From contig NC_043013.1 of the NCBI RefSeq assembly GCF_006345805.1, forward strand, positions 13,950,001 through 14,014,000: a DNA stretch of 64,000 nt, in the 5' to 3' direction. The notes under the pieces were generated by a model, which was not told the DNA's origin, searched no databases, and worked only from the letters and a program-made list of their open reading frames with translations. The stretch comes from Octopus sinensis (lineage: Eukaryota). Below, one piece after another: positions 31,114-52,505 of this stretch; the stretch's first letter is position 1; every line of letters begins with the position of its first letter. The position numbers were made by a program, and so were the translations under genes.

Positions 31114-31116
<3 letters not shown>
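27891..31116 (+). mobile_element. CR1/L2-group LINE, near-complete ORF2 (APE plus RT) with 3' tail, several frameshifts
   Basis: IFLLNV...ALTETHL...IRTDRKGRSHGGVAMYI...YRPP...MGDFNLP...PTREDNILD...SDHN (APE); QHGFRPGRSCLTQLL...VIYLDFAKAFDKVDH...SGVPRGTVLGPLMF...YADDTK (RT, ORF 29705-30856); 3' stem-loop tail cccagcatggccacggcctttgggctaaaac then aaggattt repeats. (TA)n on both sides. Confidence 0.93.
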
Positions 31117-31616: not shown

Positions 31617-31649
<33 letters not shown>

Positions 31650-31657
31650 AATACATA

Positions 31658-31689
<32 letters not shown>

Positions 31690-31841: not shown

Positions 31842-31873
<32 letters not shown>

Positions 31874-31971
31874 ATACATATATACATACATATATATACA
31901 TATATACATACATATATATATATTATATACATATATACATACATATATATATACATATATACATACATATA
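31117..31971. repeat. Compound (TA)n microsatellite, TATG-type left and TACA-type right
   Basis: Seen directly. Confidence 0.98.
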
Positions 31972-32445: not shown

Positions 32446-32465
32446 ATATATATAATATATATATA

Positions 32466-32519
<54 letters not shown>

Positions 32520-32534
32520 GTATATATATATATG

Positions 32535-32590
<56 letters not shown>

Positions 32591-32596
32591 ATATAT

Positions 32597-35045
32597 ACTA
32601 CGCAGTGGCGCCCGGTTCTGGCATTTGTGTGACTCTCGATGCCAAAGTTTGGGACAAGTCCTTCCAGGATCATCCAGATATATATTATGGCATATCTTTC
32701 TCGCCTACGCTCCAGGGAATAGAGCTTTAATCTCTTGAGTCTTTCCCAGTAGCTTATATGCTGCACAGAGGCTATCTTCTTCGTGTAGCTTCGTTGGATC
32801 GCCTCAAGTTTTGTGATCAACTTGACACTGGATGGTGACCATAGCTGAGAGCAATAGTCAAAGTGGCTTAGGACAAGTGTCTTCCAGAGGACCGTCATGG
32901 TTTCTTGTTCTCTTGTTCTAAAGGTTCTAAGAATCCATCCGGCCAGCCGTCTACATTTCATTGCCAGTTTAGCAGCATGTACATGAAAGGTCGCGTCATC
33001 ACTCATGTGAATACCCAGGTCACGCACTGATTGTGCCTCTGGGATTGCAATCCCTCCGGGTCCAGTGTATTCATTGGGTATTGCATTCAGTTTTGCATGC
33101 TGATAGCATAAAGCTTGAAACTTTTCAGCATTGAACTGCATGCTATTCTTTTCAGCCCACTTGTATATTTTGTCCAGCTCACATTGCAGGTGCTTAGTGT
33201 CTTCAGGGTTCTGTATTGCCTGTGAAATTTTTGTACCATCTGTATAACTTGTGGTCGTGGCTCTCTGCGTGGCTGAGGGCATGTCTGAGAGGGCCATTAT
33301 GAACTGTAGTGGTCCCAAAACAGTGCCCTGAGGAACACCGCTCACTATTTGCGTGTTAATGGAAGTGGCCCCATTGGCTACTACCACCTGACTTCTATTC
33401 TTCAGAAAGTCATGAAGCCATTCTCCCAATTTTCCAAATATGCCAAGATCACGCAGTTTGTGACATATCATTCCATGATCGACTTTATCAAAGGCCTTTG
33501 CAAAGTCGAGATATATCACTTCCACATTTGAGTGGTTGAGCAGTCGTTTCAGCACCCAGTCATAGTGTTGTAGGAGCTGAGTTAAGCAGCTTCTTCCTGG
33601 TCGGAAACCATGTTGGGTGTCAGGCAGCAAGCCATTTTCTTCGAGGAAGGTGATTAGTTTCCTTCTGACTATTCGTTCCATGACCTTGCTGATGTGTGAG
33701 GTCAGAGAGATAGGTCTGTAGTTCTTGGCCTCCGCTCTGCTACCTCCTTTATGAATAGGGCATATTTTACCTTCCTTCAGTTTTCTTGGAAGTTTGCCAG
33801 TTGCAAGGAAGCTCTGAAAGAGAGACTGCAGTGGTCTTGCTAGGACTCTCTTACATACTTTTAGAAGGATTGCCGGGAATCCATCGGGGCCAGTAGCTGA
33901 GTTTGTTTTCATCTCATCTATAGCCTTTATAACATCGTCTTCCTTTATATTGATGTAATCAATTATCGCCGCCTCTGACACCATATCTGCAGTGGTGAAG
34001 AAGTCAGTTGGATTGCTGATTTAGAAATGCCCAAGGGTTGGGGTGAAAACACTCTTGAATTGCTCATTTAGTATTTCACTTACCCTCATTGGATTTCCTG
34101 TCTGTGTGCCATCCCTTTCAAGGAGTGGCCCTATCCTACAGTGCACCGTAGCTGTTTCTTTGGCATACCTGTAGAAAGCTCTGGGTTAGATTTTATGTTG
34201 TCTATAGCCCAGGCTTCTTTGTCTGCTCTTTCCTTTTCATGGGAGAGTTGCAGACATTTTTCAATTTCCAACAGTTTCATTTTCAGGCGGGACTTTTCAT
34301 TGCTTTCAATTTGTTTGTTTAGGCGATTTGAGATTTTTGTACGCCGACTCATTAGAATTTTCCTCTCTCTGGGGATTTTGTTCTTGTGTACAGTGGCCTT
34401 TCTCTCTGGGACACATTTGTAGCATATGGCTTGCATTACAGACATGAATTGTTGAAGTTTCATGTCGATGTCTGGCGAGGAGAGACATTTAGGCCAGTTT
34501 TGTTTGAGGATCTCTTTCTCAATTTGTTTCCAGTTTGCCTTATTGAAGTTCAAGCTGGAAAGATTCTGAGAGTTTCTTGAAGGCTGCATGTCCATGCTTT
34601 CCTTTGGCCCGTACATGGTCAGCTCTACCATGTTGTGATCCGAGAGTAGTGTCGGTGTCACTTTCACATTATGGATGAGATCCATATTATTTGTGAAGCA
34701 GAGATCCAGTGTGTTACCTGCCCCGGTTGGTTGGAGTATTACTTGTTCCATGTACATAGTGTTGATGAGGTTCAGGAGGGACCTCGCCTGTCCTCGTTCA
34801 CATCGTGTCATTCCTGGGAGAGAAAGGCCTTCGGGCCATCTGACATTGGGTAGATTGAAGTCTCCCATGGGAAGTACACTTATGTGTTGTTCTAGTGGGA
34901 CTAGAACTTCTATTTTTATAACGCAGTCTTCAAACTTGCCCATATGGCTTGGGGCATCTGGAGGGCGATATGTAGCACACACAACTACACCAAGTTGCCT
35001 TACATGTACAATTAGTGTGTCACCCACCGAGTTTGAGTTGAGTAT
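32597..35045 (-). mobile_element. CR1/L2-group LINE, 5'- and 3'-truncated, long open RT reading frame
   Basis: ORF 34131-35027 (APE: YRPP, MGDFNLP, NTLDLCFTNN, SDHN) and ORF 32437-33984 (RT: KNYRPISLTS, QHGFRPGRSC, YLDFAKAFDKV, SGVPQGTVLGP). I see one frameshift (~34175) and one stop (~34020) between them. Paralogue of 27891-31116. Confidence 0.93.
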
Positions 35046-35346
35046 TTTTAACGCCTCCCACCCCCACCCCCAGAAGTAGAGGTAGGCTGGATTGTAGCCA
35101 TACTTCTATACAAGAGGGTGGACAAGTTACAATTGATCGAAATTACAAGAGACGGGCTAACAATTCCAGTCTGTTATATATTTTGAGTATTGTTATCACT
35201 AGCGATATCAAGATATAACTTTGTATTTTGTATTTTATGTGTAGATGTATATATATAGATGTACATGTAATATGTACACATATATATACACATATATACA
35301 TGCACTAGCACTATGACCCGGCAACGACGGGTCTTTAATGCTAGTA
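35046..35346 (-). mobile_element. Non-autonomous Helitron/Helentron-like element, 5' 300 bp only
   Basis: Starts TACTAGC-attaaagacccgtcgttgccgggtc (hairpin); same start as 52210 and 62979. Confidence 0.7.
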
Positions 35347-35354
35347 TATATATA

Positions 35355-35510
35355 TATGTCTGACTTTCAGTTTCTGTCTACCAAATTCACTCACAAGGCT
35401 TTGGTCTGCCTGAGGCTATAGTAGAAGACAATCACCCAAGATGCAACGCCGTGAGACTGAATCCGGAACCGTTTGGTAGGGAAGCAAGCTTCTTACCCCA
35501 CAGCCACAGG
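35355..35510 (-). mobile_element. SINE family B head half (part of the inverted duplication)
   Basis: Reverse complement matches 52045-52200. Confidence 0.8.
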
Positions 35511-37789
35511 AGAAATAGAACTCAATGCATGGAAAAGAGCAAAAAAAAGAAACAAAGTTATCCTGATGGCCCAGAGTATCGTCCATGACTGTGACATGCA
35601 CAAAACCTTGAACCCTTGAGTCACTTGCGTAAATTTTCTGCCGTCGAAATACACACAAACACACGCACATATACACACACTACATACTCCCATACACACA
35701 CACACAGTCCACGCACTCACATATACTGAAGCTCAGCAAAGTGAAGTAGAAAGCTAATTAAGATGGAGGTTAAGAATTGCAAAGACTGAATATAAATAAG
35801 AGAAAGAGAGAGTAGAGGAAAGAGAGAGAGAGTGAGTAAGTGAGAGAGAGAGAGAAAGTGGTGGTTGAGGGCATTTTAGAAATCAGATATGATGGGAGGA
35901 AAATTTTGTGGAAATACATAAGAAAACTAGACACGCCTTATATTGTACATAGACAAACACATGCACGCACGCATACACACACACACACACACAAGCATGT
36001 GTGCGTGAGCGTGTGTGTGTACGTGTGCGTGTGTGCGTATAGACGGGCAGACAAGTACCACACATATCCGTGTCTGTATGTCTGTCTGAATATGTACATC
36101 TATATGAGTGTGTGTGTTTATGTATGTGTGTATGGAGAGAAGGCACCTAACGGAAAGAGCATATGAGGAAAGATGGAAGGATGTAGTAAGGAAGTTGGGA
36201 GCGAATGTCCCTACATAACTCATCCAGGGTAAAAAGAAAAGGTGTAGCTGTTGGAACTTAAAGTAATATCAAAATTTTAAAAAAATATTACATAAGTCAT
36301 TTTAATATATTTTTATTAAAAAAAAACTCGCTAAATAAACTCTTTTAAATGTTTGTAGTGTCCTGTGTTGTCCCTTCTATGTTTGATTGTATAATCGTAA
36401 TAAAGAGAATTACTACAGTGATATATCTATTCTTTCTATTTACAGTACCATTTACATCCGTTACAGTACTATTAGTTGGTTTCACACTATTACTTCTGCT
36501 TCATCCATTTTCATTTCTGGCTCAATTTTTCCAGGTATGATATTTACTGTCTTTATTTCAGTTGTTGCTGTTGTTGTTGGTGGTGGTATTACTATTATTA
36601 TTATTATTATTGTTATTGTTATTATTGTTGTTGTTGTTGTTATTATTATCATTATTAAATGGACTAATCCCTCCAAATTTCAAGCCATGTGCCTATAGTA
36701 GAAAGGTTGTTATTATTAAGGGCAGAGACCTGGCTGAATTGTTAGCACACTGGGCAAAATGCTTAGCAGCATATTTAGAAATATTTGATACGATGTGATA
36801 TCGAAACTATGATATTTGCTGTTTTATCACATGAAATGATATTCATTCTCCATTCTAAACTATTTGATATTCTCTTTGATTTTCTGGTCCTGAATGTCTT
36901 ATAATCATTCTGCACCAATTTACAAACATGAACTTCAAATTCCTGCTGCTGCCAGACCAGTTTACTGGTATCTTGCACAATGCAGTATTAATAAACTTGA
37001 TATCTTCTAAAATATAAATTGAAATATGAAATAGAATTTATTCTTACGTATGCATTGACTGTGGATACTAGCTCATAATTTTCACATTATATGCATATAA
37101 GCCATGGGCTGGTGGTCTATTCACCTTTAATTTGATTTGGGTACATGATATTAATAAGTCATAATAATAACAAAACATCGATGTTTATCACTCCTGAATG
37201 GGATCTGGGGTGAGTTATCTCACCTTCCCGTGATTTTCAGGTGTTTTAACAGTTGACACCTTGAGGAAGTAATCTCTACTAGGCCAAGTGAAGTCCTACT
37301 GGCAAATACACAAAGCATGTACTTTAAGTATGTGTACTTACTTGTACTTGTGGCGACATTCACCCTGGGCGGGTTGAGTGGGCTTCTTCTACCACCCTCA
37401 AGGCATTGTATTCGCCATTGAGAATTCATGTAAGAAGTTTTGTAGGAATATGTGGATTTGACAAGCGGTCCCCAACAATCCCGCATGTAGAGACATCCTG
37501 TTTGCCGCAGATTGTCCGCAGACGCAGGGGCAGAACGACCGAGGAGCTGCCGGTTGTCGAAACAGACACTCCGAGGGTTTTCACCAGAGCCCCGTCTGCT
37601 GGGTTGTGGCCCTAATACTACTCGGTGTCAGACCAATCCGCCTTGGGTGGCCCTACCAGGAACCGAATTTTCCAACGGCATAGCTCTGACACTACCCGTT
37701 GGTGATCTGTTCTTGTAAGGGTACATACATTGAGTCCTGGGGTAAATAATTACCTTGGGAGCCACCATCTGAAATGATAAATATACATC

Positions 37790-38235
37790 ATGATCATCAT
37801 CGTTTAACGTCCGTTTTCCATGATAGCATGGGTTGGACGGTTCAACTGGGGTCTGGGAAGCCAGAAGGCTGCGCCAGGCCCAGTTGATCTGGCAGTGTTT
37901 CTACAGCTGGATGCCCTTCCTAACGCCAACCACTCCGAGAGTGTAGTGGGTGCTTTTTATGTGCCACCTGCACAGGTGCCAGATGAGGCTGGCAAATGGC
38001 CACGATTGGATGGTGGCTTTTTCGTGCCACCGGTACGGGGGCCAGACGAGGCTGGCAACGGCCACAATCGGATGGTGCTTTTTATGTGCCACCGGCACGG
38101 AGGCCAGTCGGGGCGGTGCTGGCAACGGCCACGTTCGGATGGTTCTCTTACGTGCCACCGGCACTGGTATCTCAGCTACAATTTCCATTGATGTTGAAAG
38201 ATTTCGATTTTGATTTTCACTTGCCTCAACAGGTC
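37790..38235 (-). mobile_element. RTE-tail-type SINE with internal ~60-bp repeats (gtgccaccggcac...ggcaacggccac)
   Basis: catcatcgtttaacgtccgttttccatg...ggatgcccttcctaacgccaaccac...ttgcctcaacaggtcttcac. Confidence 0.75.
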
Positions 38236-39034
38236 TTCACAAGTAGGGTTTGTACAAATTATATAATTTGTATATGTCACTATATTTAGTTAGAAATTTA
38301 TGAGTCGGACAATTTATCAGAAAATTGCAACCAAAAAATATTTTTCAGAAAGATAAACTGAAAACTTTAATCATCTCTAATATAAATTGGACATGGGCAA
38401 TCGTTGTGTTATTTCTTGTCTTGAGGTTCACAACCAAATGGCTGGATGGATTCGCATGAAAAATGGCACACGTGGAGATGGGTGCATAGATTGGAATGCA
38501 GTTTGTATTTTTTTCCTAACCCCCATACTTACCGAGAAAATCGATTAAAAATTTTTCTGATGAATTCCCCTCTTTCTTCTGCCATTAAAAACAACCAGTT
38601 GCTTAGAAGCTGTTTTCTGAAGGGGTGGGGTCAGGAAATTTTCATACAGCTGGAGGCTCCAATTGAAACAGGGGACCCAAAACTATAAGCTTGAAAAACG
38701 CTGTTATAGATTATGCCTAACCAAAAACGATCATAGCCACATCATCCAAACAGACTGGGTGAAACTGGGCTTAGCTGCTAGTTTCATATAAACTTCTTTG
38801 AGATCATCTCTAGTTCCAGGTGTAGAAGCAAAACCTGGCATCAAATGACAGAGGTGATGAAAGGCAAAATTAATCTTAGTAGGATTTGAAGACAGAATGT
38901 AAACAGCTCGAAGAAATTATACTGCAAAGCATTTTACCGACAATCTAACAAATGTGCCAGCTCATCACTACTCAAAGCAATGATCCATATTAGGATTATG
39001 ACATTAAGAGACTCAATATAATCAAGCATTCTTT

Positions 39035-39400
39035 TACTTGTTTCAGTCATTAGACTGTGGCCATGCTGGGGCATCACCACCTTAAAGATTAATCAACTGA
39101 ATCAACCCCAATACTTGTTTTTTAAAGCCTGGTACTTATTCTATTGGTTTATTTTGCTGAACTGCTAAGTTACAGGGACATAAACACACCAACATCGATT
39201 GTCAAGCAGTGGTTGGGGACAATCCCCAACAAAGATGTACACACAAATACATAACCTTTTCAGTTTCTGTCTACCATACGAACTCCCAAAGTTTTGGTTG
39301 GCCTGAGGCAATAGGGGACACTCACCTAAGATGTCATGCAGAGGGATTGAACTAAGAACCATGTGGTTGGGAAGCTATATTCTTACTACAGCCATTCTTT
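39035..39400 (-). mobile_element. SINE family B, near full length
   Basis: Head (gaatatagcttcccaaccac...) through tail (...ccccagcatggccacagtctaatgactgaaacaagtaaaag) on the minus strand. Confidence 0.82.
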
Positions 39401-39471
39401 GCTTATGTATTATTGAAAACAAAACAATAAAAGTAGTAAATCTAGAAATTCTAGATCATTCTTAAGCTTAC

Positions 39472-39880
39472 CATTGAACAGCAAGATGTGGAGGCATGTT
39501 ACCATTTGAATCTGCAAAATGGGTATCAAGGCCAGGCTTCAAGAACATCTCTACCACAACAAACCAAATGCAGAGATCCATTTCCATGATTATTCATCAC
39601 ATTGACGTCAGGTTTAGACAGCTGTAACACTCCTACTATCTTGCTGTGTCCACCTTGACAGGCTGAATGCAGAGATGTCATTCTCCGGTTATTCATCACA
39701 CCAGGTTTAAACTTTGACATATTCACGGTGCCAATGCATTAACATGTTACATGCAAAAATGTGTTGCCGTGCTTGGTCACTGCATTGACGTCACAATTAG
39801 ATTGCAGTAACAGCTGTGTCACAGTATACAACCTCACAGGCCAGATATAGGGGAGGTCTACTACAAAAATCTTGATTTTT
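39472..39880 (-). pseudogene. Ankyrin-repeat exon, pseudogenised (about 4-5 repeats)
   Basis: Acceptor ttgacctctttcttttacAG (39881-39900) and donor GTaagc (39471). Peptide KNQDFCSRPPLYLAC / VTQLLLQSNCDVNAVTKHGNTFLHVTC* / MNNRRMTSLHSACQGGHSKIV...PDVNVMNNHGNGSLHLVC / DSNGNMPPHLAVQ; at least 2 frameshifts and a stop. Confidence 0.85.
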
Positions 39881-40140
39881 CTGTAAAAGAAAGAGGTCAA
39901 CATTTTAGCATTCAGTTTACTCTCAAATGTTATATGCTTATTTATTTGCATGGTTTTGAATTAACCATGCATTATCTTGTAGCTCTGAGATTGAATATGT
40001 GTTTACTTTTACATATTGTTTACATATTCGTTTTCTCCATACTTGTTAACACCCATCAGGCTGGTTTATTATCGTTTTTGTTCCCGGGAAAAGATCTTTA
40101 TATAGACCAAGTTTTGTATATTTGGAATCTACATGATAAA

Positions 40141-40530
40141 ACAGTATCGCCTGGCGTTACTCGGGTTTGTTTCGGCCCTTTAGAATTGGAATTTTTGAAA
40201 AGTAAAAATTTTGCATTATGTAGCTTGTTATTCTCTTTAAGTGAACATTTTTCTGGTTGAAATACACTGAAAAATGGTGACACAGCAGTCAAAAAATCGT
40301 AAAAAAATAGAGCTTTTCATAGAAAAAATGCACCTTTTTGATGTAAATAATTTTTGGTGTTTACATGGTCTGATTTGAATTTTTTCTTCTACGGAACGAA
40401 GAGCAAGCCTTCTTCTATCATACTCTCAATTTTGGTCAATTTGCGCTGTAGGGTCTCGGAGGAGATAGTGTTAGTTGAAGGCTACCAAACCTGCCATACA
40501 CAGACAACTTCAGCTTTATATATATAGCGA
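40141..40530 (+). mobile_element. Non-autonomous Helitron/Helentron-like element (second family)
   Basis: 5' hairpin cagtatcgcctggcgttactcggg and 3' cagacaacttcagctttatatatatag; same terminal architecture as 52210-53342. Confidence 0.6.
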
Positions 40531-41329
40531 TAACAATATAAAAGATGTAGAAAATAAGGTATGAGAGTGGAGTTGAAGCTGGATCATGTCAATGAGTGAT
40601 GTTATGCTAACCATTCAGGTAGTACTCTGTATGTGGTCTTGGATACCTGTATGTGTAGCAGCAGTAGTACCATCCCATATCTAGGATGGAACTACTGTGA
40701 TCCTCACTTCAGTTTTGATTATTGCAGATTTGACCATATCAATGCGTATGTAGTGTATGCCTAGCATTGAGGTTAAACTAGAAAAACTAAGCTGAATGAA
40801 TGTTCTGGGCTGTTTATCTACCTACATGAAATCATACATTTACACGTACCTAAACCTACTTACCTAGCTACTATCTATCTATCTATCTGTCTGTCTGTTG
40901 CCTGTCTTCCGTCCGTCTGTCTGTCTATCTATCTATCTATCTATCTATCCATACTTCTATCTGTTTGTCAGTCTGTCTAATATGTGCACTAGATAAATAA
41001 CAGACATGTTATGTATGTATGAAACTGGTTTGCACACACACACCACCACGTCTACTCTGCTAAAATACTTTTCTCAAACACGTCTGCTCTGCAACAAACC
41101 AATTCTTTTTTCTGTATATACATAAACCTTATATTAAAGTTCTCATACATATATATCCATCATTAGAAATTAACATTAAATATTTCAACATCAAGTTATA
41201 AATTTTCAAGGGAAGTAACTGCAATTTTTAAAACAATGTTTATCTTAGAGTTGATTCCCCTGTGTAACTGTCCCCCTTTCTTAATTCCAACTCTGTTTAT
41301 GTTGGAAGGTAAGATTCATTTTTGAATGG

Positions 41330-41969
41330 TGGTGGTGATGGCGTTGTTGTTATTGTTGTTGTTGTTGTTGTTGGTAGTGGTGGTGTTGGTGTTGGTGGTG
41401 GTGTCGGTGGTGGTGGTGGTGGTGGCGGTGGTGGTGGTGGTGGTGGTGGTTTCGATGATATTTAGGATAATGATAATTATCAAGATAATAAAGATAACGT
41501 TACACATCAACACTCTCCGCCTCCTCCTCCTCATCATCATCATCATCATTATCACCACCATCATCAGTAACCAAAAGAACACGCACACACACACACACAC
41601 ACCGCTGCCTTCACCATTGTCGCACACTTTTCTTCATTTCGAACACTCTTAACCACTATTACCACTACTACCACCACCGCCACTACTATCCCTACCACCA
41701 TCAACAACAACAACACAAACACTGACACTGCCACCACTATATCCACCATCTCTGCCACCGTCATCAATATTATTACCATCACCACGTACACCACCACCGC
41801 TACCACCATCGCCACCACCACCAACAACAACAACAATACCATCTCATCCATCGTTACCAACACCACTGTCACCACCACCATCACCTCCACCGCCTCTCCT
41901 GATACTATCATCACCATCGCCAACAACATCAACACTATCATAACTACCACCGCCACCACCACTACCATC
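41330..41969 (+). repeat. Direct duplication of GGT/ACC-rich block, copy 1 (partner 44232-44832)
   Basis: Shared unique core ttcgatgatatttaggataatgataattatcaag...gtcgcacacttttcttcatttcgaacactc... Confidence 0.95.
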
Positions 41970-41989
41970 AAAGAGGGGGGTCTTTGTGT

Positions 41990-42130
41990 GTTGGTGTCTT
42001 AATGTTCTTGTAACTCAGCGGTTCAGCAAAGAGTTCGATAGAATAAAAAGTACTGGGGTTAATTAGACTAAAAATTCTCCAAGGTGGTGCCCCAGCATGG
42101 CCGCAGTCTCATGATTGAAACAAATAAAAG
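41990..42130 (+). mobile_element. SINE family B, 3' part
   Basis: ...aaggtggtgccccagcatggccgcagtctcatgattgaaacaaat. Confidence 0.78.
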
Positions 42131-42739
42131 GTTAAAAAAAAAGATAAGACATTATCTAGTATGTCCCTCTTTTCCTTTTTAATCTCATCTATGAGATTTG
42201 AGGGAGTTTAACTATCATTTCTAACATGTCGAATGACTACGTAGAGGCCACTCTCGGTGACGTAGGTTGAAAGCGTCATTCATAGACGTCTGTTGATAGA
42301 TGAGAAGAATAAATTAGTGAAAAAATTGCAGAAAATATTTTTTTTTCAGAGACGTTTGAGACGGGAAGAGGCCATTTGATGCCAAAGTGGTCGAAAGAAC
42401 TCTTAATTAACGAACGTAACTGCACTTGAAACATTCTCCACTGGAACTATATTTAACATCAAAACAATTAACAAAGAGAGACTTAGAGCAAATATTGCAT
42501 GGCTCTCTGTTTTAAAATTGATGGCAGAAAGAAAGGGAGAGATAAAGAGAGAAAAAGGAGACTTTGAGAGAGTGTGTGGGGGGGGGATGTACTCGGTAAC
42601 CAGAGATTCTTATTTACGTAAGAATCATATTCTCATTAGCTCTTTAACAGTTGACAAGTCTTGTTGTTGTAGGTATTGCCGTCGTCGTCGTAATCGTCGT
42701 CGCCGCTGGTGTTGTTTCTACCGAAGGCTGAGCTGCAGT

Positions 42740-44110
42740 CTTTGAATGTATTGGGCCGGGAGCGCGTGTCACACAGTTCCGAGCAGATATATATGTGTGC
42801 GGCTTTCCAGCAGCACTTTGCCCGACTGTTTGGAACGAGCGATGTATCAGAGACGACAGTAGACGTCAGTTCTTGCCTCGATGGTCTGTCACATTTCTCA
42901 GCAAATGACACGAAATACTGTGAGAAGCTGCAAAAAAGCTGTCGAAATATCAAAAATAGATGATCAATTGCACAAGGCATAAATCATACGGTTTAGAAAT
43001 AGTCTGCCTTACAAATTCTACAGGTTCCATGTCAAACTTCTTTGGTGACTCCTAAGCTGCCGTCTACTGCAACTGACAGTTGAACGGGAGAATTCCTAGT
43101 ATTGCTAGCTGGGAAGTGATAACGCTGCCAAGAAATGATTGGCAAAGGGATCATCGTAGACAATCAGGCAATGCCTCTGTTAGACATAGACTTTAAGATT
43201 TGGGCTAATGAATTAGCGAAAAGTTTAGCAGAATGTCGTTGGTGGTCTGGTCAGTGAAGCGCAAACGTATTCTACACAACATACGGTGGGTTGGGAACAA
43301 AATGGGCTTCAGTGGCGCTCTGATCAATTTGGATTAATCAAAAGCTTTTGATAGGGTCAACCATCGATACTTGGAAGCCGTTCTTAAATTGGCCCGGTTC
43401 AGACGTGTTTTCAGAGATCGGGTCGCTGCATAATGCACAGCAGCATTTGCTCGTGGTCAAAGTAAACGGCTACCACTTCGAACAGTTTTGCATCGCACAT
43501 CCGGTCCGATAGGGCTTCTCTCCTTTTGCCTCTTCTGTACATGCTAGTTCTTGAGCTCCAACTGTGAAAGCTGGAACAGTTGAGTGAAAGGAGGAATCCC
43601 TTTCGAACTGGAGGGTCGTATTGACGTGTGCCACAAGACATCACCGATATTCATAGTGCAGACCAACCAAACCAGGATGCTCATATAGTCCTGAATATAA
43701 AGGTTGGAGTGGCATGGCTGGAATACCTTTTGATCATTGGCTTGCATGATCAGGATTGAACTACACCAGCTACAAAAATACTACAACAACACTATCTCAC
43801 CACCATCACTACCACCATACATACATACCACCACAGTCGTCCATACCACTACTACCATCGCCATCCATTCCACCCCTACCTTCAATACCACTACCACCAG
43901 GGTCGTATTGACGTGTGCCACAAGACATAAGCGATATTCATAGCGCAGACCAACCAAACCAGGATGCTCAACCACTTATCGCCGTTTGTATCTCAGCTAA
44001 ATTTAAGAGCTTTCGGCAGCATTCAGCACCTTTCACCGAGTGCTGCGACAGGCCATCCACCATTTTCAGATCACCACCCACTGTGAAGAGTTAAGGAAAG
44101 CGCCCATGGA
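42740..44110 (+). mobile_element. Tx1/L1-clade LINE RT remnant, interrupted
   Basis: MCAAFQQHFARLFG...; LLDIDFKIWA; ALINLD*SKAFDRVNHRYL; VKVNG...VR*G.SP. Many stops. Confidence 0.75.
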
Positions 44111-44231
44111 AAGCTGCAGATGTTGTCTGGGAGGGTGTGTTGGCAGTGGCAACGGCAGTGGTAGTGGCAGTGGCGGCGGGGAAGGAGATGGTGGTGGAGC
44201 GGGAGACGGCAGCGGTGGCGGCGGCGGTGGT

Positions 44232-44832
44232 GGTGCTGGTGATGGCGTTGTTGTTATTGTTGTTGTTGTTGGTGGTGGTGGTGGTGGGGTCGGTGGTGGT
44301 GGCGGTGGTGGTGGTTTCGATGATATTTAGGATAATGATAATTATCAAGATAATAAAGATAACGTTACACATCAACACTCTCCGCCTCCTCCTCCTCCTC
44401 ATCATCATCATCATTATCACCACCATCATCAGTAACCAAAAGAACACGCACACACACACACACACACCGCTGCCTTCACCATTGTCGCACACTTTTCTTC
44501 ATTTCGAACACTCTTAACCACTATTACCACTACTACCACCACCGCCACTACTATCCCTACCACCATCAACAACAACACAAACACTGACACTGCCACCACT
44601 ATATCCACCATCTCTGCCACCGTCATCAATATTATTACCATCACCAAGTACACCACCACCGCTACCACCATCGCCACCACCACCACCAGCAACAACAATA
44701 CCATCTCATCCATCGTTACCAACACCACTGTCACCACCACCATCACCTCCACCGCCTCTCCTGATACTATCATCACCATCGCCAACAACATCAACACTAT
44801 CATAACTACCACCGCCACCACCACTACCATCA
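44232..44832 (+). repeat. Direct duplication of GGT/ACC-rich block, copy 2
   Basis: See 41330-41969. Confidence 0.95.
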
Positions 44833-46019
44833 TTATCATCATTATCGTCATCACCCCCAACACAACTACTTCTAAGGAGACTTCAGCCAACGAAGGAACC
44901 CTTACATCAGAGGTTTCCAACCGGGGTGTCGTGACACCCTGGGGAGTGTGCTATAGACAGTAGTTACGGGCGCCTCGAGGTTTTTTAATTTAAATAACAA
45001 TTAACAAAAAGCAAATGTTAATACGGGTATCGGGTGGATCGAGGAGTCAGGGTGACCAGGTCAGAGACGTGTTGGTGACCTTTGATGTATGTAATCATTT
45101 AACTTGCTAAAAATGGGTGACAAGGAGCCCTCAAAAACCTCAGTACTGCTTTCTTTTAATGGTTAGGGGGGGGAACATGTAGTCCTGAATATAAAGGTTG
45201 GAGTGGCATGGCTGGAATACCTTTTGATCATTGGCTTGAATGATCGGGGTTGAACTATACCATCTACAAGAATACTACAATATTATCTCACCACCATTGC
45301 TACCACCATACATACATACCACCACAGTCGTCCATACCACTACTACCATCGCCATCCACTCCACCACTACCATCAATACTACTACCACCAGCACCATCCA
45401 TATAACTACAACCTCCACCATCCATCCATACCATCACCACCACCATCCATACATTCCCCAACATCCAAACCACCACAGACTCACACCACCATCAACACCA
45501 GCCATATTACCACCACCATCCATCCATATACCCCCCAACATCCATACTACCATCCACACAACCACCACCCATACAACCACCACCATCATCAATACTGCCA
45601 CCACCATCCTTACCACTACCCATACCCTTACTCCCGCCATTCATACCACCACCACCCATACCACCAGCACTACAATCATCCATACAATCACCACCACCAT
45701 CTATACCAACATCCATACTACCGCTACCACTACAACACTGCCACTGATGGTGTTGTAGTCGCTCCTGCAACACTATCGTCGGTACTACAATAACAAAACC
45801 ACCCGCCTCTTGAACACTACCACCACTACAACCACCAAAACCGCCACAATGCAATTGTTACAACAACACCACCACCACTACCACTTTAACACTACAAGTA
45901 CTACCAATTTTTTACCAATACACCACCATTAATACCATCACCATTAATACCATCACCATTAATACCATCACCATTAATACCACCACCACCACCGCTACAA
46001 ACCAGCATACAACTATTAT

Positions 46020-46200
46020 TTCTTGTGTCGGTCATTTGACTGTGGTCATGCTGGAGCACTGCTTTGAATGGTTTTAGTCGAGCAAATCGACGCTAGGGCT
46101 TTTTTTTAAACCTAGTACTTATTCTATAGGTCTCTTTTGCCAAACTGCTAGTTACGGTGTTGTAAACACACTAACACCGATGGTGGACATACACACACAT
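46020..46200 (-). mobile_element. SINE family B, 3' half
   Basis: Reverse complement ends gctccagcatgaccacagtcaaatgaccgacacaag. Confidence 0.8.
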
Positions 46201-46267
46201 ACATGTATGTATGTTTGTATGTATGTATGTATATATATATATGTGTGTATATATATATGAATGTATA

Positions 46268-46329
<62 letters not shown>

Positions 46330-46345
<16 letters not shown>

Positions 46346-47025
46346 ATAAACAGGGTACAAGACAAACACACAAGGAAAAATCCCCTTCATCAGCTGTCCC
46401 TAGTTCAACACCAGCGTGTTTTTTCGTTGTTAAAAAAAGGTCCGTTCCATGCTTGTTTTTACGTTTTCGTTTCTCGTTGAGTTCTACGTCTATTTGTGGT
46501 GTCCTGTACTCACGTATATATATTTATATATGCATGTATATATACATGTAGATGTAGGTACGTACATATATGTATGTATGTATGCATATATTTTATTTAT
46601 TACACTATTGTATGACTGAGCGCCCTCGCGTCGATTCGATTCGATTCGTTTCGTTTCGTTTCGTTTCGTTTCGTTTCTTCTTCTCTAAGCAAGTTTATAT
46701 ATATATATATATATTGTTATTATTTTTTTATATTTTTTTTACGTATTTTTGAATTTTTTTTTTTTTTTCGAGTAACATCGTCCGTTTTTTCCGTCACCGT
46801 GTTGTATACTTTCGAGGTTTTCTTCCAAGGAATCTAATGCGACTGGCTTAGATTTCCCTTGGCGGGCTGCCCAGATTGGAGCAATCTCAAGATTAATCAG
46901 CCGAAATTGCGAAGATGATCTGGTTCTTGACTGATGACTGAGAGCTTCGAAAGTCCCGTCTGTGTGTTTTTTTGTCGTCTTCAAAATGTTTCACGTTCTT
47001 GTCCCTGTTTGTGTTTTTTTTTAAC

Positions 47026-47074
<49 letters not shown>

Positions 47075-47380
47075 TAAATTAGGGTATCTACGAGATACCA
47101 CCTAGCTGAAAACAGCAGCCATGAACCGACTCTAAAACCACCTTAAGTTTTCATATAGCAACATGGAGAAAAGACAAAGAGACAAGATGAAACTAGTAAA
47201 AAATTATTGGATAATTCTAGATCCCGGATTTCTGACTTTGCATTTAGAAATGCTTTGCCTCGTCAATAGAATACACTCAGATGTTGTGATTTCAGTCACT
47301 TATAAAACATAAAGACCGGATAACTGGCTTTATGAATCCTAAGGCTCAAGAATTTTTTTTTTTAATGTTGCGTTTGAACT
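46330..47380. mobile_element. Cluster of PLE pLTR-like fragments separated by microsatellites
   Basis: Half-hammerhead (CTGATGA plus stem II, minus, ~46370-46395), (TTTCG)n, and a full variant hammerhead at 47214-47272. Confidence 0.45.
47214..47272 (-). ncRNA. Variant type I hammerhead ribozyme (UUGACGA core)
   Basis: Minus strand attcta-TTGACGA-ggc aaa gcattt/ct/aaatgc aaa gtc-a-GAAA-tccggga-TC-tagaat. 6-bp stem I, near-palindromic ATCC-G-GGAT, AUC triplet; C3U change and one extra A before GAAA. Confidence 0.7.
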
Positions 47381-47402
47381 GTTTAAGGTTTAATACTTGT
47401 AA

Positions 47403-47640
47403 GAAGGTGCATGGCTCAGTGATTAGATCGTTGGGCTCACAATCATGAGCTACAGAGTTCAATTCTCAGACCGGATTGTGTATTGTGTTCGTGAGAAAGA
47501 CACTTTATTTCACGTTGTTCCAGTTCACTCAGCTGTAGAAATTAGTTGCGACGTCACTGGTGCCAAGCTGTATTGGCCTTTGCCTTTCCATTAGGTAACA
47601 TCGATGGTTTGGAGATGGGAGGCTGGTATGCATGGACAAC
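47403..47640 (+). mobile_element. tRNA-derived SINE family C
   Basis: ggtgcatggctcagtgattagatcg...gagttcaattctcagaccgg (A/B boxes) followed by ...gacactttatttcacgttg... Confidence 0.7.
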
Positions 47641-48438
47641 TGCTGATCTTGCACGGACTTTTGTCTCGGAAGGGAACTTTCTAGGTGCAATCTCATGGTT
47701 ATGCATGATCGAAGTGGGGGCCTTTTTTCCAATTTACTTTTACCTGTAAGAAAGACATGAATAGAAAGAAGATTTCTGAGGGATTTTGTTCTTGGATGGA
47801 AGGACTAGGAATAATGGTTAGTATGGTATCGCAGATAGTTGGATGCCACAAAGGCGACGAGAAGTAGAAAGACGATTGGATTGCTCCTAGGAACAGAGAT
47901 TATGATAGTAGCGACAGGAAAGAAAGATGAGAGCATGCCAGAGGATAGAGTGTGTCCGTTAGTGATTAATTACCAATCAAGTGAGTGGTTCTACTCTGAA
48001 TGTGATACAAAATGTCCCAGAACGTGGAAGCAGTATTCCATTATTGCTATCGCTTCAGCCTAGCAGCGTCTCGACATTACCAGATACACTAAGTTTCCAT
48101 CTTAAAATTCCGACTGTCATCAACTTTCAACTGGGCTTGAACACACAACCATTATTTCTACAAGCAGGATTTCAACGATCTTAACCATTTGGGCTCAATT
48201 TCTACTGGATAGGAAAAATGAAAGTAGATTTTTTAGTTCTGCACTGAAACGATTGTGTGTAGTTGCTGTGAGATGCCGACAATTTGGTACGATTGATTGG
48301 ACAGTGAATTTGTTTTGGCGGCAGTACTTCCGGCACAAGAAGCAAACGCACGCACAAGTAGAAATGTACATATACAAATATAAAGGGTGAAAGAGAGAGG
48401 GGGAGAGAAATAAAGAAAGACGGAAAGAAAGAAAGCGA

Positions 48439-48479
<41 letters not shown>

Positions 48480-48484
<5 letters not shown>

Positions 48485-48605
48485 GGTTTGAAATTTTGGC
48501 ACAAGGACATCAATGTTCAATTTTTATTAATTTTATCGATCCTGAAAGGATAAAAAGCTAAGTCAACCCTGGCGGCATTTGAACTTAGAACGTAAAGACG
48601 GACAA
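48480..48605 (-). mobile_element. SINE family A fragment
   Basis: Reverse complement tctttacgttctaagttcaaatgccgccagggttgac... Confidence 0.75.
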
Positions 48606-48622
48606 TGATGATGATGATGATC

Positions 48623-48654
<32 letters not shown>

Positions 48655-48670
48655 CATCATCATGATGATC

Positions 48671-48723
<53 letters not shown>

Positions 48724-49085
48724 CATGATGATGATCATGATGATGATCATGATGATGATGATGATGATGCCCTGATGCAGTACCAGGTAGTGGCTCTCGC
48801 GGCTTTTGATGTATCTTAACTGATTGGAAGTGTTATCATGTACATTGTTTTGTCTTGGTATAAACGATGGGCTACAGCAAATATTCCGCTCAATACCACA
48901 GATTTGCTTGTCAGTTGTTTGACCTTAACCAGTTGAGCATGTCCCTAAGTGGCTGACGATATGTGCATCTCTGATCACGATCAGAAGTTGCGGGGGAGCA
49001 TCATAACCATGTGTTGAGGGGAATTCTTTGAGGCTTGAATAATTCACATTTGGAAACATGGGTGTTTCGTTCAACATCCTTAAAC
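48606..49085 (-). repeat. (GAT)n tract (48606-48770) abutting an unclassified interspersed repeat (48771-49085)
   Basis: The microsatellite is seen directly. The adjoining sequence ends ...gtactgcatcagggc-(CAT)n on the minus strand, suggesting a retroposon tail. Confidence 0.55.
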
Positions 49086-49327
49086 AAGCCTTATTCAAAA
49101 ATTCTATATATCTAGAGAAATTACTTGGTTCATCTTGATTACCTCCCTTCCATTACTTTTTAATATATCTCATTGACTCCCGATATATGTGCTAAATTAT
49201 TAATTTTTTTCTTTTTTTTTCCACAGTTAGTAAATATTATGTATAACATTTTCTTTTAATTCAACTCATTAAAAAATCACCATTTACTAGCTAATTATGA
49301 TTATATATTAATAGAAATGGATATATA

Positions 49328-49414
<87 letters not shown>

Positions 49415-49734
49415 AACATGAAATGATTTCTATATAAGATACTAATATTTATTGAAATCCTTTAGAAAATTATCTAAGAATATTTACTTAAATTTATAAT
49501 GTTGGCAAATGAAATAGAGATAAGAATGTGCGTTGTCCGTTTGATTGGAAAATTCTATAAGCAGCTGAAGATTGCTCGACATTTTAAAACTGATGTAATA
49601 CTTACAGTGTTTAATAAAATGAAGTAGCATGAAACAATTGTACTACTCTACCTCGGATATAATTGTTGCTTATTTTGATGATATATATATAGTAAAAGAT
49701 AAAAGATGTATATATATATATATATATATATATA

Positions 49735-49890
49735 CTTTTACTTGTTTCAGCCATTTAACTGTGACATACTGGGGCACCGCCTTGAATGGGTTTTAGTCGA
49801 ACAAATCCACACACGACTTATTTCTTAAGCCTAGTACTAATTCTATCGGTCTCTTTTGCCGAATCACTAAGTTACGGGAGCGTAAACAAA
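49735..49890 (-). mobile_element. SINE family B, 3' part
   Basis: Reverse complement ...aaggcggtgccccagtatgtcacagttaaatggctgaaacaagtaaaag. Confidence 0.8.
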
Positions 49891-50800
49891 CCTTACTCTA
49901 AGAAATAGACTGACGATTCACTAACAACAAATTCGAGACTCCAGTACAAGACAGATTCCACTGAGTGGACATATAGACATATGTGAAAAAGATAAGTCCC
50001 CTAAACTCTAGGTCTTCCCACTCTACCTGTGTTCAGTGAATACCACAGATGAAGCACGGATAAATAAAGAAAACACTTTCATACAGAAGTACAAACCCAG
50101 ACTTAATAAATTTTAACAATGTACATATACAAATAACTATTCACACACAAAACTCATTCTGCCACTTAACATGATGAACCTATACAGCTAACAATCTAAA
50201 CTTTAACCGCTGGACTACATAGAAACGACTCCTGTCTACTCTCCTACCAGACATTAAATTTGGAATGTCTTGATTGTAACTAAATACGTTCACTCAACCG
50301 TGTCGGCCTTAATTTTAGGCACAAAATATACTGCCGCGTGACATTGACGCACGGACGTAGCGGGAATCGTACAGAAGGTTCTAAACTTAATCACATGTTC
50401 ATTCTCTACAAAAACATTCAGAACATTGTCTGTTTAGTACTATCACTAAACTTGTTCAGTCAGCTGTGTCAGCCTTAACTTATCATTTGATACTAACATT
50501 CGGACGTAGCGGGGAACCTACAAATATATCTAAGACCAGTCATGTGACTATCTTCTATCTTCTATCTTCAAACCCTTTTCAAAACATATACTAATTTGAG
50601 CCATGAACTCCCTATAAAAACAGGGCAAGCTCCAAACACTAGTCAGAAGCAAAACAGCAGCGATATAAGCAACGTCTTTCTATTTCAAATTTTTGAAAAT
50701 CAGTGAAAACTGTGAAACCGGTTAAATCTTTAAATATAATAATAAAAAATATTTTAACTATTCTCAGTGTATTTTCAACTTCTATTATTTCCAATATATA

Positions 50801-51165
50801 TGGGCGCAGGAGTGGCTGTGTAGTAAGTAGCCACATGGTTCCGGCTTCAGTCTACTATAGCCCCAGGCCGACCAATGTCTTGTGAGAGGATTTGGGAGAC
50901 GGAAACTGACAGAAACCAGTCGTATATATATATGTGAGTGTGTGTGTGTGTATTTGTGTCTGTGTTTGTCCCCCACCATCATTTGACAACCGATATTGTT
51001 GTGTTTACGTCTCCGTAACTTAGCGGTTCGGCAAAAGAGGCCGATAGAATAAGTACTAGGCTTACACAGAATAAATCCTGAGGTCGATTTGCTCGACTAA
51101 AGGCGGAGCTCCAGCATGGCGACAGTAAAATGGCTGAAATAAAACAATAAAACAATAAAAGAATA
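50801..51165 (+). mobile_element. SINE family B, near full length
   Basis: gggcgcaggagtggctgtgtagtaag...ctccagcatggcgacagtaaaatggctgaaataaaacaataaaacaat. Confidence 0.88.
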
Positions 51166-51181
51166 TATATATATATATATA

Positions 51182-51365
51182 GCCGTATTTCGTCTGCCGT
51201 TACGTTCTGGGTTCAAATTCTGCCTGGGTCGACTTTGCCTTTCATCCTTTCGGGGTCGATAAATTAAGTACCAGCTACGCACTGGGGTCGATGTAATCGA
51301 CTTAATCTAATTGTATGTCCTTGTTTGTCCCCTCTTTGTTTAGTCCCTTGTGGGTAGTAAAGAAA
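51182..51365 (+). mobile_element. SINE family A, 5'-truncated
   Basis: gtatttcgtctgccgttacgttctgggttcaaattc...gtagtaaagaaat. Confidence 0.88.
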
Positions 51366-51380
51366 TATATGTATATATAT

Positions 51381-51414
<34 letters not shown>

Positions 51415-51416
51415 AT

Positions 51417-51847
51417 ATACACACACACTACGTAAACACACACACTCATATATATGTACACATTCAGACAGACATACAGACACGCGTATGTGTGATACTT
51501 CTCTGCCCGTCTATACACACACATGCTTGTGTGTGTGCGTGTATGCGTGCGTGCATGTGTTTGTCTATGTACAATATAAGGCGTGTCTAGTTTTCTTATG
51601 TATTTCCACAAAATTTTCCTCCCATCATATCTGATTTCTAAAATGCCCTCAACCACCACTTTCTCTCTCTCTCTCACTTACTCACTCTCTCTCTCTTTCC
51701 TCCACTCTCTCTTTCTCTTATTTCTATTCAGTCTTTGCAATTCTTAACCTCCATCTTAATTAGCTTTCTACTTCACTTTGCTGAGCTTCAGTATATGTGA
51801 GTGCGTGGACTGTGTGTGTGTATGGGAGTATGTAGTGTGTGTATATG

Positions 51848-51900
<53 letters not shown>

Positions 51901-52505
51901 TGTGTATTTCGACGGCAGAAAATTTACGCAAGTGACTCAAGGGTTCAAGGTTTTGTGCATGTCACAGTCATGGACGATACTCTGGGCCATCAGGATAACT
52001 TTGTTTCTTTTTTCTGCTCTTTTCCATGCATTGAGTTCTATTTTTCCTGTGGCTGTGGGGTAAGAAGCTTGCTTCCCTACCAAACGGTTCCGGATTCAGT
52101 CTCACGGTGTTGCATCTTGGGTGATTGTCTTCTACTATAACCTCAGGCAGACCAAAGCCTTGTGAGTGAATTTGGTAGACAGAAACTGAAAGTCAGACAT
52201 ATATATATATACTAGCATTAAAGACCCGTCGTTGCCGGGTCTAGTGCTAGTGCATGTATATATGTGTATATATATGTGTACATATTACATGTACATCTAT
52301 ATATATACATCTACACATAAAATACAAAATACAAAGTTATATCTTGATATCGCTAGTGATAACAATACTCAAAATATATAACAGACTGGAATTGTTAGCC
52401 CGTCTCTTGTAATTTCGATCAATTGTAACTTGTCCACCCTCTTGTATAGAAGTGTAGCTACAATCAAGCCTACCTCTACTTCTTGGGGGGGGGAGGCGTT
52501 AAAAA
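51417..52505 (+). repeat. Inverted segmental duplication, copy 2
   Basis: See 35046-36132. Confidence 0.95.

What the first reader, a model, noticed from the sequence alone, without database searches (positions are those of the whole stretch)
35046..52505. Inverted 1.09-kb duplication that reads as the footprint of a ~16-kb inversion made by staggered breaks
Seen: X(rc) at 35046-36132 and X at 51417-52505. The left copy continues into unique sequence at 36133 but is cut mid-Helitron against the LINE 5' end at 35045. The right copy continues into the rest of the Helitron but starts abruptly in a TA run. Established: staggered-break inversions leave inverted duplications at both breakpoints. 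Inference: the ancestral order was LINE | TA-run...M...X-Helitron. Re-inverting 35046-51416 puts a TA run at the LINE's 5' end, matching the TA-flanked sister LINE. The ankyrin exon lies inside the inverted segment.
Basis: partly seen in the sequence, partly recalled or inferred. Interest (0 to 1): 0.7.

Follow-up and report, generated by a model that had tools for sequence, protein, structure and literature searches.

The report
Inverted 1.1-kb duplication, cephalopod repeat DNA
A 1.1-kb stretch (the tail of a Helitron transposon plus the host DNA next to it) really is present twice, in opposite orientation and 15 kb apart, in repeat-rich cephalopod DNA; it is an ordinary break-repair scar that may mark a small inversion, but the window alone cannot show that the inversion happened.

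Summary
X' (35045/6-~36132) and X (~51421-52505) are inverted copies: 1021 of 1133 aligned columns match, and the indels lie in microsatellites and a G run. X is not a transposon copy. It is the last 294 bp of a non-autonomous Helitron (hairpin + CTAG + T) plus ~790 bp of host flank. A third Helitron copy (62981-63503) shares only the Helitron part and runs straight across X's outer edge, so the right arm is in its original context there. The left arm ends against a LINE truncated at both ends; the right arm starts at a (TA)n tract. The anatomy fits an inversion with breakpoint duplication (staggered breaks). It fits equally an inverted duplication made without inversion, for example LINE- or TA-tract-associated break repair. 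The species is absent from every searchable collection, so the outgroup test could not be run. Arm divergence is 0.8% in the centre and 8-10% at both edges. This suggests gene conversion, in which case the spacer could also flip by recombination. Verdict: real, ordinary in kind, mechanism unresolved. Interest is low.

The parts
35045..36132 (-). Left arm X' (reverse complement of X). Its outer end abuts LINE B; its inner end runs into sequence that has no other copy in the window.
51421..52505 (+). Right arm X. Its inner end abuts the (AT)n run; its outer end continues into the rest of the Helitron.
35045..35344 (+). Helitron 3'-terminal ~300 bp in the left arm (element on + strand). Ends in a hairpin GACCCG-GCAACGA-CGGGTC, spacer TTTAATG, CTAG at 35341-35344, followed by T(A)n.
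52212..52745 (-). Helitron piece at the right arm (element on - strand, last base 52212). 52212-52505 lies inside X; 52506-~52745 is the continuation shared with copy 3. Its 5' end was not determined.
62981..63503 (-). Third Helitron copy (C3). Same 3' terminus (ATAG variant) in a different flank ((TTA)n/(TA)n). About 99% identical to the arms over the last ~240 bp and 81-85% identical further in.
51541..52453 (+). Nearly identical centre of the arms (0.80% substitutions; equals L 35102-35976): the putative gene-conversion tract. It is bounded on the inner side by the 36-bp L-only indel.
32598..35044 (-). LINE B: APE endonuclease + RT. 5'-truncated inside the EN domain at ~35037-35044 and lacking the last ~346 bp present in LINE A. 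One frameshift and no stops in 773 codons.
27900..31116 (+). LINE A: an older, longer, independent copy of the same LINE group (75% identical to LINE B, at least 4 frame changes). Its 3' end carries an (ATTTAAGG)-type tail and is followed by a TA tract. The 5' limit is approximate.
51365..51420 (.). (AT)n run directly abutting the inner end of the right arm. To its left lies a 5'-truncated SINE (51181-51361) that is itself flanked by TA on both sides.
32450..32597 (.). TA-rich tract abutting the truncated 3' end of LINE B. It is part of a ~1.5-kb TA-rich zone (31117-32597).
36133..51364 (.). Spacer M between the arms. Non-coding repeat-rich DNA: microsatellites, SINE pieces, an internal direct duplication and no Pfam domain above threshold.
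39471..39960 (-). Ankyrin-like fragment. About 4 degenerate repeats spread over three frames with a stop. Ank_2 scores 23.5 bits against a cut-off of 27.3. No homolog found.
35364..35497 (+). SINE-like repeat piece inside X (R equivalent ~52062-52195). Other copies at 7893-8026 and 39258-39386 (75-78%). It ends before the Helitron terminus.

Best explanation
X is a locus-specific inverted segmental duplication left by repair of chromosome breaks. It is neither a mobile element nor a functional unit. SHOWN: the duplicated unit is the last 294 bp of a non-autonomous Helitron plus ~790 bp of the host DNA beyond its 3' end. The right arm keeps its original neighbour on the outer side, because the Helitron continues there. 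The left arm's outer end is joined to a LINE that is truncated at both ends. The right arm's inner end is joined to a (TA)n tract. INFERRED, most likely history: two breaks about 17 kb apart, one in a fragile (TA)n tract and one inside or beside the Helitron with single-strand nicks ~1.1 kb apart. The 5' overhangs were filled in and the ends were rejoined in the opposite order. My version differs in that LINE B was captured at, or inserted into, the left junction rather than sitting there beforehand. Afterwards the two arms exchanged sequence by gene conversion (centre 0.8%, edges 8-10% diverged). Arms that convert each other can also cross over, so the spacer may have flipped again since, or may be polymorphic, and its present orientation says little about the founding event. 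The locus has no evident function.
For: Duplication and its limits. Helitron 3' end (hairpin dG -11.9 kcal/mol, z -4.5; CTAG then T; same last base in three copies, one of them in a different flank). Helitron continuity across X's outer edge in R and C3. LINE identity and double truncation. No remainder of the Helitron on the far side of LINE B. The right arm starts exactly at a TA run, and LINE B's truncated 3' end also sits at a TA run; a random point lies at a TA run about 3% of the time (35 runs, 1.5 kb of 64 kb). The two junctions the inversion model predicts to be new are the two with repair-like features, while R-outer is shown to be ancestral and L-inner is clean. Size and one-sidedness match documented staggered-break duplications: PMC1885836. 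LINEs at inversion or inverted-duplication junctions are documented: 10.1101/2024.12.14.628481. Heterogeneous divergence (Fisher p = 4e-8; CpG changed 4/6 in the inner edge vs 2/19 in the centre) and the same switch point near 52453 in the R-C3 comparison. LINE B is too intact to be as old as the arm edges.
Against: The inversion itself is not observed: no outgroup, other haplotype or split element shows the ancestral order. An inverted duplication without inversion predicts the same four junctions. The TA-run coincidence is only about p = 0.03 per junction, and TA tracts could equally act as a priming site or a polymerase barrier in a duplication-only model. The higher divergence at the arm edges could come from error-prone repair synthesis or fast-mutating CA/CpG-rich sequence rather than from gene conversion. 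The C3 identity step could reflect Helitron subfamily chimerism. Genome-wide copy number of the 790-bp 'host' part is unknown.
Confidence: 0.45

Rival explanations
1. Inverted duplication without inversion. A break at the left site (at the edge of the TA tract, possibly made during LINE B integration) was resected. The 3' end folded back or switched template to the TA-run|X boundary 15 kb away and copied 1.09 kb of X. The new end was then joined to the LINE cDNA. The spacer never changed orientation.
For: LINE B sits exactly at the junction and is truncated at both ends. Self-complementary (TA)n at the right arm's inner edge is a natural fold-back priming site or polymerase barrier. LINE insertions accompanied by inverted duplication of nearby genomic DNA are described experimentally and in tumours (10.1101/2024.12.14.628481). 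LINE B's low decay fits the 0.8% divergence of the arm centre.
Against: It needs resection or intrastrand pairing over ~15-17 kb, whereas the documented cases involve small hairpins. There is no TA repeat or filler at the left arm's inner junction, where the primer should have been. The 8-10% divergence at the arm edges needs a separate explanation.
Confidence: 0.3
2. LINE B was already in place with a TA run at its 5' end. One break fell precisely at the LINE/TA boundary and a 1.09-kb staggered break flanked X. The segment was inverted and X was duplicated.
For: Same anatomy as the best explanation. LINE A is flanked by TA tracts, so this LINE group may prefer TA targets. The size is within the published range.
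Against: It requires a break exactly at a LINE's truncated 5' end. LINE A and LINE B are independent copies with different ends, so the 'matching flank' argument carries little weight. LINE B's missing 3' end needs a further event. LINE B shows 0 stops in 773 codons, which is unlikely (P 0.01-0.035) if it predates a duplication as old as the arm edges suggest.
Confidence: 0.12
3. Helitron 3' read-through (transduction). The Helitron at the right arm missed its terminator, carried 790 bp of downstream host DNA and transposed to the left site in the opposite orientation. LINE B later removed its 5' part.
For: X begins inside a Helitron and extends past its canonical 3' end into the flank, which is what end-bypass transduction produces (Helitron biology from my own knowledge).
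Against: X's inner end has no CTRR or hairpin. The left copy lacks all of the Helitron except its last ~300 bp. The model needs an extra LINE insertion plus a deletion. The uneven divergence is not explained.
Confidence: 0.06
4. X is a high-copy composite repeat, and the two arms are independent insertions that happen to lie 16 kb apart.
For: The window is saturated with repeats. Parts of X (the Helitron end and the SINE piece) are repeated in the window.
Against: Within 64 kb the ~650 bp of X outside the SINE piece and the Helitron end has no third copy. C3 shares only the Helitron part. The composite order SINE piece-(TA)n-Helitron end is identical base for base in both arms. Edges more diverged than the centre are not expected for independent insertions.
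Confidence: 0.05
5. 35045-52505 is one large DNA transposon or virus-like element, with X as its 1.09-kb terminal inverted repeats.
For: Its size (17.5 kb) and long inverted ends resemble Maverick/Polinton-type elements (from my own knowledge).
Against: No ORF longer than 172 aa and no Pfam domain in the interior. No target-site duplication (GAGTTGAGTA vs TTTTTTCCTA). The right 'TIR' continues without a break into more Helitron, as copy 3 shows.
Confidence: 0.01

Closest known systems
Inversions with inverted duplications at their breakpoints (staggered-break model; Ranz et al. 2007, PMC1885836)
   Same: Inverted copies of a locus-specific sequence bracket a segment. The duplication is one-sided and its size (1.09 kb) is within the reported 46 bp-1.9 kb. 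One copy keeps its original outer neighbour.
   Different: Here the inversion is not demonstrated. The bracketed segment is only ~15 kb, against the much larger cytologically defined inversions in flies (relative size from my own knowledge). A LINE sits at one junction. Part of the duplicated unit is a transposon end. The arms are far more alike in the centre (99.2%) than the ~88% average in Drosophila.
LINE-integration-associated inversions and inverted duplications (bioRxiv 10.1101/2024.12.14.628481)
   Same: [quoted passage not shown]
   Different: Those are somatic or experimental human L1 events with inverted pieces of about 1-3 kb lying next to the insertion. Here the template lies 15 kb away, the LINE has no tail or TSD left to examine, and the event is germline in a cephalopod.
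Inverted low-copy repeats kept alike by gene conversion and mediating recurrent inversion by NAHR (own knowledge; not checked in a paper here)
   Same: The arms are nearly identical in the centre and diverged at both edges. The longest uninterrupted identity is ~210 bp.
   Different: The arms are short (1.1 kb) compared with classic cases (10 kb or more). Neither conversion nor flipping is directly shown.
Non-autonomous Helitron
   Same: A 3' hairpin, a 7-nt spacer and CTAG followed by host T. The same terminus occurs in different flanks. Insertion is at (TA)n.
   Different: The 5' end (TC) was not located and the window holds no Rep/helicase. X contains only the last 294 bp plus host flank, so X itself is not a Helitron.

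Membership tests
Staggered-break inversion with breakpoint duplication | Inverted copies of an otherwise non-repeated sequence at the two ends of a segment | tested here: met
   within the window only two copies of the non-Helitron, non-SINE part of X exist. Genome-wide uniqueness was not testable.
Staggered-break inversion with breakpoint duplication | The segment between the copies is inverted relative to an outgroup or ancestral arrangement | not testable with these tools
   The species and close relatives are absent: exact look-ups failed; the best LINE relatives are 60-75% identical; there is no homolog of the ankyrin-like piece; there is no DNA match in metagenome contigs.
Staggered-break inversion with breakpoint duplication | Each copy keeps ancestral contiguity on one side only (R outer, L inner) | tested here: inconclusive
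   R outer contiguity is shown by copy 3. L inner contiguity cannot be checked without an outgroup.
Staggered-break inversion with breakpoint duplication | A single copy of X in the ancestral state | not testable with these tools
   No outgroup sequence is available.
Helitron (for the repeat H inside X) | 3' end CTRR preceded by a short hairpin, followed by host T | tested here: met
   GACCCG-GCAACGA-CGGGTC, TTTAATG, CTAG|T. The DNA fold scores z -4.5.
Helitron (for the repeat H inside X) | The same terminus in several copies with different flanks | tested here: met
   L/R versus C3.
Helitron (for the repeat H inside X) | 5' terminus TC after host A | tested here: inconclusive
   The 5' end was not located. 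R-C3 similarity ends at R ~52745 and C3 is cut by the window end.
Helitron (for the repeat H inside X) | Rep/helicase protein (autonomous elements) | tested here: not met
   The segments scanned showed no such domain, which is consistent with a non-autonomous copy.
APE-type non-LTR retrotransposon (LINE B) | Endonuclease and reverse-transcriptase domains on one strand | tested here: met
   Exo_endo_phos_2 6e-09, RVT_1 1.8e-27; relatives in Argonauta hians.
APE-type non-LTR retrotransposon (LINE B) | Intact 3' end with tail and target-site duplication (canonical TPRT insertion) | tested here: not met
   homology to LINE A stops ~346 bp before LINE A's 3' end, at a TA run. No TSD can be defined.
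Large DNA transposon or virus-like element with long TIRs | Target-site duplication, internal genes, and arms that are true element termini | tested here: not met
LINE-associated inversion or inverted duplication | A LINE at the junction with an inverted copy of nearby DNA | tested here: met
LINE-associated inversion or inverted duplication | TPRT signature (tail at the primary end; TSD-like overlap of the breakpoints) | tested here: not met
   LINE B's 3' end is missing, so the signature is absent or was erased.

The most novel reading that the evidence does not exclude
A single germline event in a cephalopod in which a LINE cDNA, primed at a break in a fragile (TA)n tract, bridged to a distant end that had been staggered by 1.1 kb. 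That one step would have produced the LINE insertion, a 15-kb inversion and the inverted duplication. It would be a natural, evolutionarily fixed counterpart of the LINE-1-induced inversions so far documented in human cells and tumours.
Probability: 0.15. Interest if true: 0.45.

Novelty: new member of a known kind. Interest (0 to 1): 0.2.

Why it matters
If the inversion were confirmed, this would be a clean small example outside insects of the staggered-break signature. It might also link retrotransposition and TA-microsatellite fragility to structural change in cephalopod genomes, which are known for heavy rearrangement and high repeat content. As it stands it is one of many small structural scars in non-coding repeat DNA. 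No gene is affected, and the 'ankyrin exon' is not credible. For the scan there are two practical lessons. An inverted duplicate pair alone cannot distinguish an inversion from an inverted duplication. Uneven arm divergence warns that such arms may still be recombining.

Tried and rejected
(1) Large transposon or virus-like element with 1-kb TIRs: rejected. There are no ORFs or domains, no TSD, and the Helitron continues past the 'TIR'.
(2) LINE B simply inserted into a longer left copy: the expected remainder of the Helitron is absent beyond LINE B. The idea survives only with an extra deletion.
(3) LINE A and LINE B as an old inverted duplicate with shared ends: rejected. They have different 5' and 3' extents and different levels of decay.
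(4) The H terminus as part of the neighbouring SINE-like repeat: rejected by comparison with two other copies of that repeat.
(5) Using the SINE left of the right arm's TA run to date that junction through a TSD: uninformative, because it is flanked by TA on both sides.
(6) Reaching the same locus in other assemblies or species: exact look-ups of two LINE B ORFs failed. The homology search with the LINE RT showed that the species is absent from the collection. The search with the ankyrin-like fragment found nothing. An exact scan of metagenome contigs with the Helitron terminus found nothing.
(7) RT template-switch capture of an X transcript: considered and set aside. A 1.09-kb RNA ending at ...GTTAAAAA has no support, and X contains T runs that would stop Pol III.
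(8) Rfam scan of the window: nothing.

Full report
OBSERVATION. The repeat finder reports three collinear inverted blocks. BLASTN gives 35045-35706 vs 52505-51851 (96.7%), 35651-36006 vs 51865-51515 (96.4%) and 36030-36131 vs 51523-51421 (91%). In a gapped alignment 1021 of 1133 columns match, with 24 substitutions. The gaps are a 36-bp CA/CG block only in the left copy, a 41-bp (TG)n block only in the right copy, a 5-bp G-run difference and single-base indels. The outer edge is sharp: '...GGCGTTAAAAA|' at 35045/6 and at 52505. The inner edge fades into a TA/CA microsatellite and is good to about 5 bp.

WHAT X IS MADE OF. A third partial copy (C3, 62981-63503) aligns with both arms, but only from one fixed point onwards. 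Read on the opposite strand, that point is a canonical Helitron 3' end: hairpin GACCCG-GCAACGA-CGGGTC, seven bases, CTAG, then host T inside a (TA)n run. The hairpin region folds with dG -11.9 kcal/mol and z = -4.5. The last base of the element is 35344 in the left arm, 52212 in the right arm and 62981 in C3. C3 sits in a different flank, so this is a true element terminus. It is also distinct from the adjacent SINE-like repeat, whose two other copies in the window end before it. X is therefore the last 294 bp of a Helitron plus ~790 bp of host DNA beyond its 3' end; that flank includes a SINE piece and three microsatellites. Two independent insertions of one transposon cannot produce this. 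In both the right arm and C3 the Helitron continues without a break across X's outer edge to about 52745 / 63503, so the right arm is in its original context on that side.

THE JUNCTIONS. Left outer: X' abuts a minus-strand LINE (Exo_endo_phos_2 and RVT_1; best named relatives in Argonauta hians). This LINE B is cut off inside its endonuclease domain at ~35037-35044. Unusually, it also lacks the last ~346 bp that LINE A retains, ending instead in a TA tract at ~32598. The remainder of the Helitron (52506-53348) is not found beyond LINE B or anywhere else in the window except C3. Right inner: X starts directly at an (AT)n run (51365-51419), and left of that run is a 5'-truncated SINE flanked by TA on both sides. 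Left inner: X' passes into sequence with no other copy in the window, with no filler and no TA run. Perfect (TA)>=8 runs number 35 and cover 1.5 kb of the 64 kb, so a random point touches one about 3% of the time. Two rearrangement junctions at TA runs is therefore mildly non-random and points to TA-tract fragility. That link between TA tracts and fragility is an inference from general knowledge.

THE SPACER. The region 36133-51364 has no ORF above 172 aa. It has no Pfam domain except a sub-threshold ankyrin signal. That signal comes from 39471-39960 (-), where about four degenerate ankyrin repeats are spread over three reading frames with a stop. A search of 5.8 billion proteins returned nothing at E <= 1e-3. 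It is a decayed fragment, not an exon. A large transposon or virus-like element with X as TIRs is excluded: there are no genes, no TSD, and the Helitron continues past the 'TIR'.

TIMING CLUES. Divergence between the arms is very uneven. It is 9.6% in the inner 115 bp, 0.80% in the central 872 bp and 7.8% in the outer 51 bp (Fisher p = 4e-8). CpG sites have changed at 4 of 6 positions in the inner edge but only 2 of 19 in the centre. The inner switch coincides with the 36-bp indel. The right arm and C3 show the same kind of step: about 99% identity over the last ~240 bp of the Helitron, then 81-85%, switching at the same place near 52453. The simplest reading is gene conversion homogenising the middle of an older duplication, but error-prone repair synthesis near the junctions and Helitron subfamily chimerism are not excluded. 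LINE B has one frameshift and no stop in 773 codons, whereas LINE A needs at least four frame changes. If LINE B were as old as the arm edges imply (4-4.8% per lineage), the chance of zero stops is 0.01-0.035. Either LINE B arrived at or after the duplication, or the duplication is as young as its centre.

Ranz et al. (PMC1885836) found inverted duplications of ancestrally unique sequence at 17 of 29 Drosophila inversions. The duplications ranged from 46 bp to ~1.9 kb, and in 12 of 18 cases only one breakpoint was duplicated. They explained these by staggered breaks, fill-in and end joining. X fits that pattern. The two junctions the model calls new (LINE|X' and TA|X) are the two that look like repair junctions, and the one 'old' junction that can be checked (right outer) is old. 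That is real but indirect support. Against the details: LINE A is not a sister with matching ends, TA runs are common, a break exactly at a pre-existing LINE's truncated end is a coincidence, and LINE B looks too young and is truncated at both ends. A version in which LINE B was captured at the junction, or inserted there later, fits better. LINE integration is now known to generate inversions and inverted duplications of nearby DNA with the LINE at the junction (10.1101/2024.12.14.628481).

WHY THE INVERSION CANNOT BE CALLED. The same paper shows that an inverted duplication can arise without any inversion, by fold-back or template-switch priming from a resected end. Here the self-complementary (TA)n at the right arm's inner edge would be a natural priming site. 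That model predicts the same four junctions and differs only in the ancestral orientation of the spacer. No element in the window is split across the breakpoints. No outgroup could be reached: exact look-ups failed, the collection's closest LINE relatives are 60-75% identical, the ankyrin route found nothing, and the Helitron terminus has no match in metagenome contigs. If the arms do undergo conversion, crossovers between them would flip the spacer, so even the present orientation is weak evidence.

VERDICT. My estimates are:
- Inversion with breakpoint duplication at the origin: about 0.5 in all. The best-explanation confidence of 0.45 and the rival confidences were each set separately and are not meant to add up.
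- Inverted duplication without inversion: about 0.3.
- Helitron read-through transduction: about 0.06.
- High-copy composite repeat: about 0.05.
- Large TIR element: about 0.01.

The feature is a new instance of known kinds of structural scar in non-coding, repeat-rich cephalopod DNA, and its interest is low. The organism call (cephalopod, octopod-like) rests and on my recollection of octopus-type SINE sequences. The species was not identified.

Noticed in passing
53349-59185: A ~5.4-kb satellite of a 22-bp unit (AAAGAGATCAAAGAGGGTGCCG) with a 133-bp higher-order period. It is followed by 11-bp and 9-bp arrays (~58760-59000) and then more 22-bp units. It starts ~850 bp beyond the Helitron piece attached to the right arm and may be internal to that Helitron.
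   Followed up: partly
59886-60226 and ~62808-62935: Two near-perfect palindromes (341 bp at 96.8%, and ~128 bp). Each is embedded in a TA or TAA/TTA microsatellite and looks foldback- or MITE-like. The second lies directly upstream of Helitron copy C3.
   Followed up: no
41363-41970 vs 44228-44832; 43682-43900 vs 45176-45391: A direct duplication inside the spacer (96.2% and 91.8% identity) in CCA/GGT-rich low-complexity DNA. Its similarity level is close to that of the arms, suggesting several duplication events in this neighbourhood.
   Followed up: no
27900-35044: Two LINEs of one group lie tail to tail (A on +, B on -; 75% identical) across a ~1.5-kb TA-rich tract. That tract also holds a ~450-bp piece bounded by 40-bp direct repeats (~31972-32013 and ~32404-32445).
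   Followed up: partly
R ~52453/52454 (L ~35102, C3 ~63211): Identity among the three Helitron copies drops from ~99% to 81-92% at the same position, where the three copies carry three different bases. On the element strand the young block begins ...TCTATACAAG. This could be a conversion-tract limit or the 5' end of a short, young Helitron module.
   Followed up: partly
12753-13683, 17170-17598, 21784-22239, 6309-6722: Mariner-type transposase remnants (HTH_48, DDE_3, Transposase_1) and another LINE endonuclease remnant. The window appears to contain no intact host gene.
   Followed up: partly
37949-38164: A 62-bp tandem repeat (3.4 copies, GC-rich) inside the spacer that resembles part of a SINE. 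Not characterised.
   Followed up: no
400-4400, 27300-27900, 31117-32597: Very long TA/TATG-type microsatellite zones. Several transposon ends (LINE A 3' end, Helitron 3' ends, SINEs) and rearrangement junctions sit at TA runs, which suggests either a preferred insertion target or fragility.
   Followed up: partly
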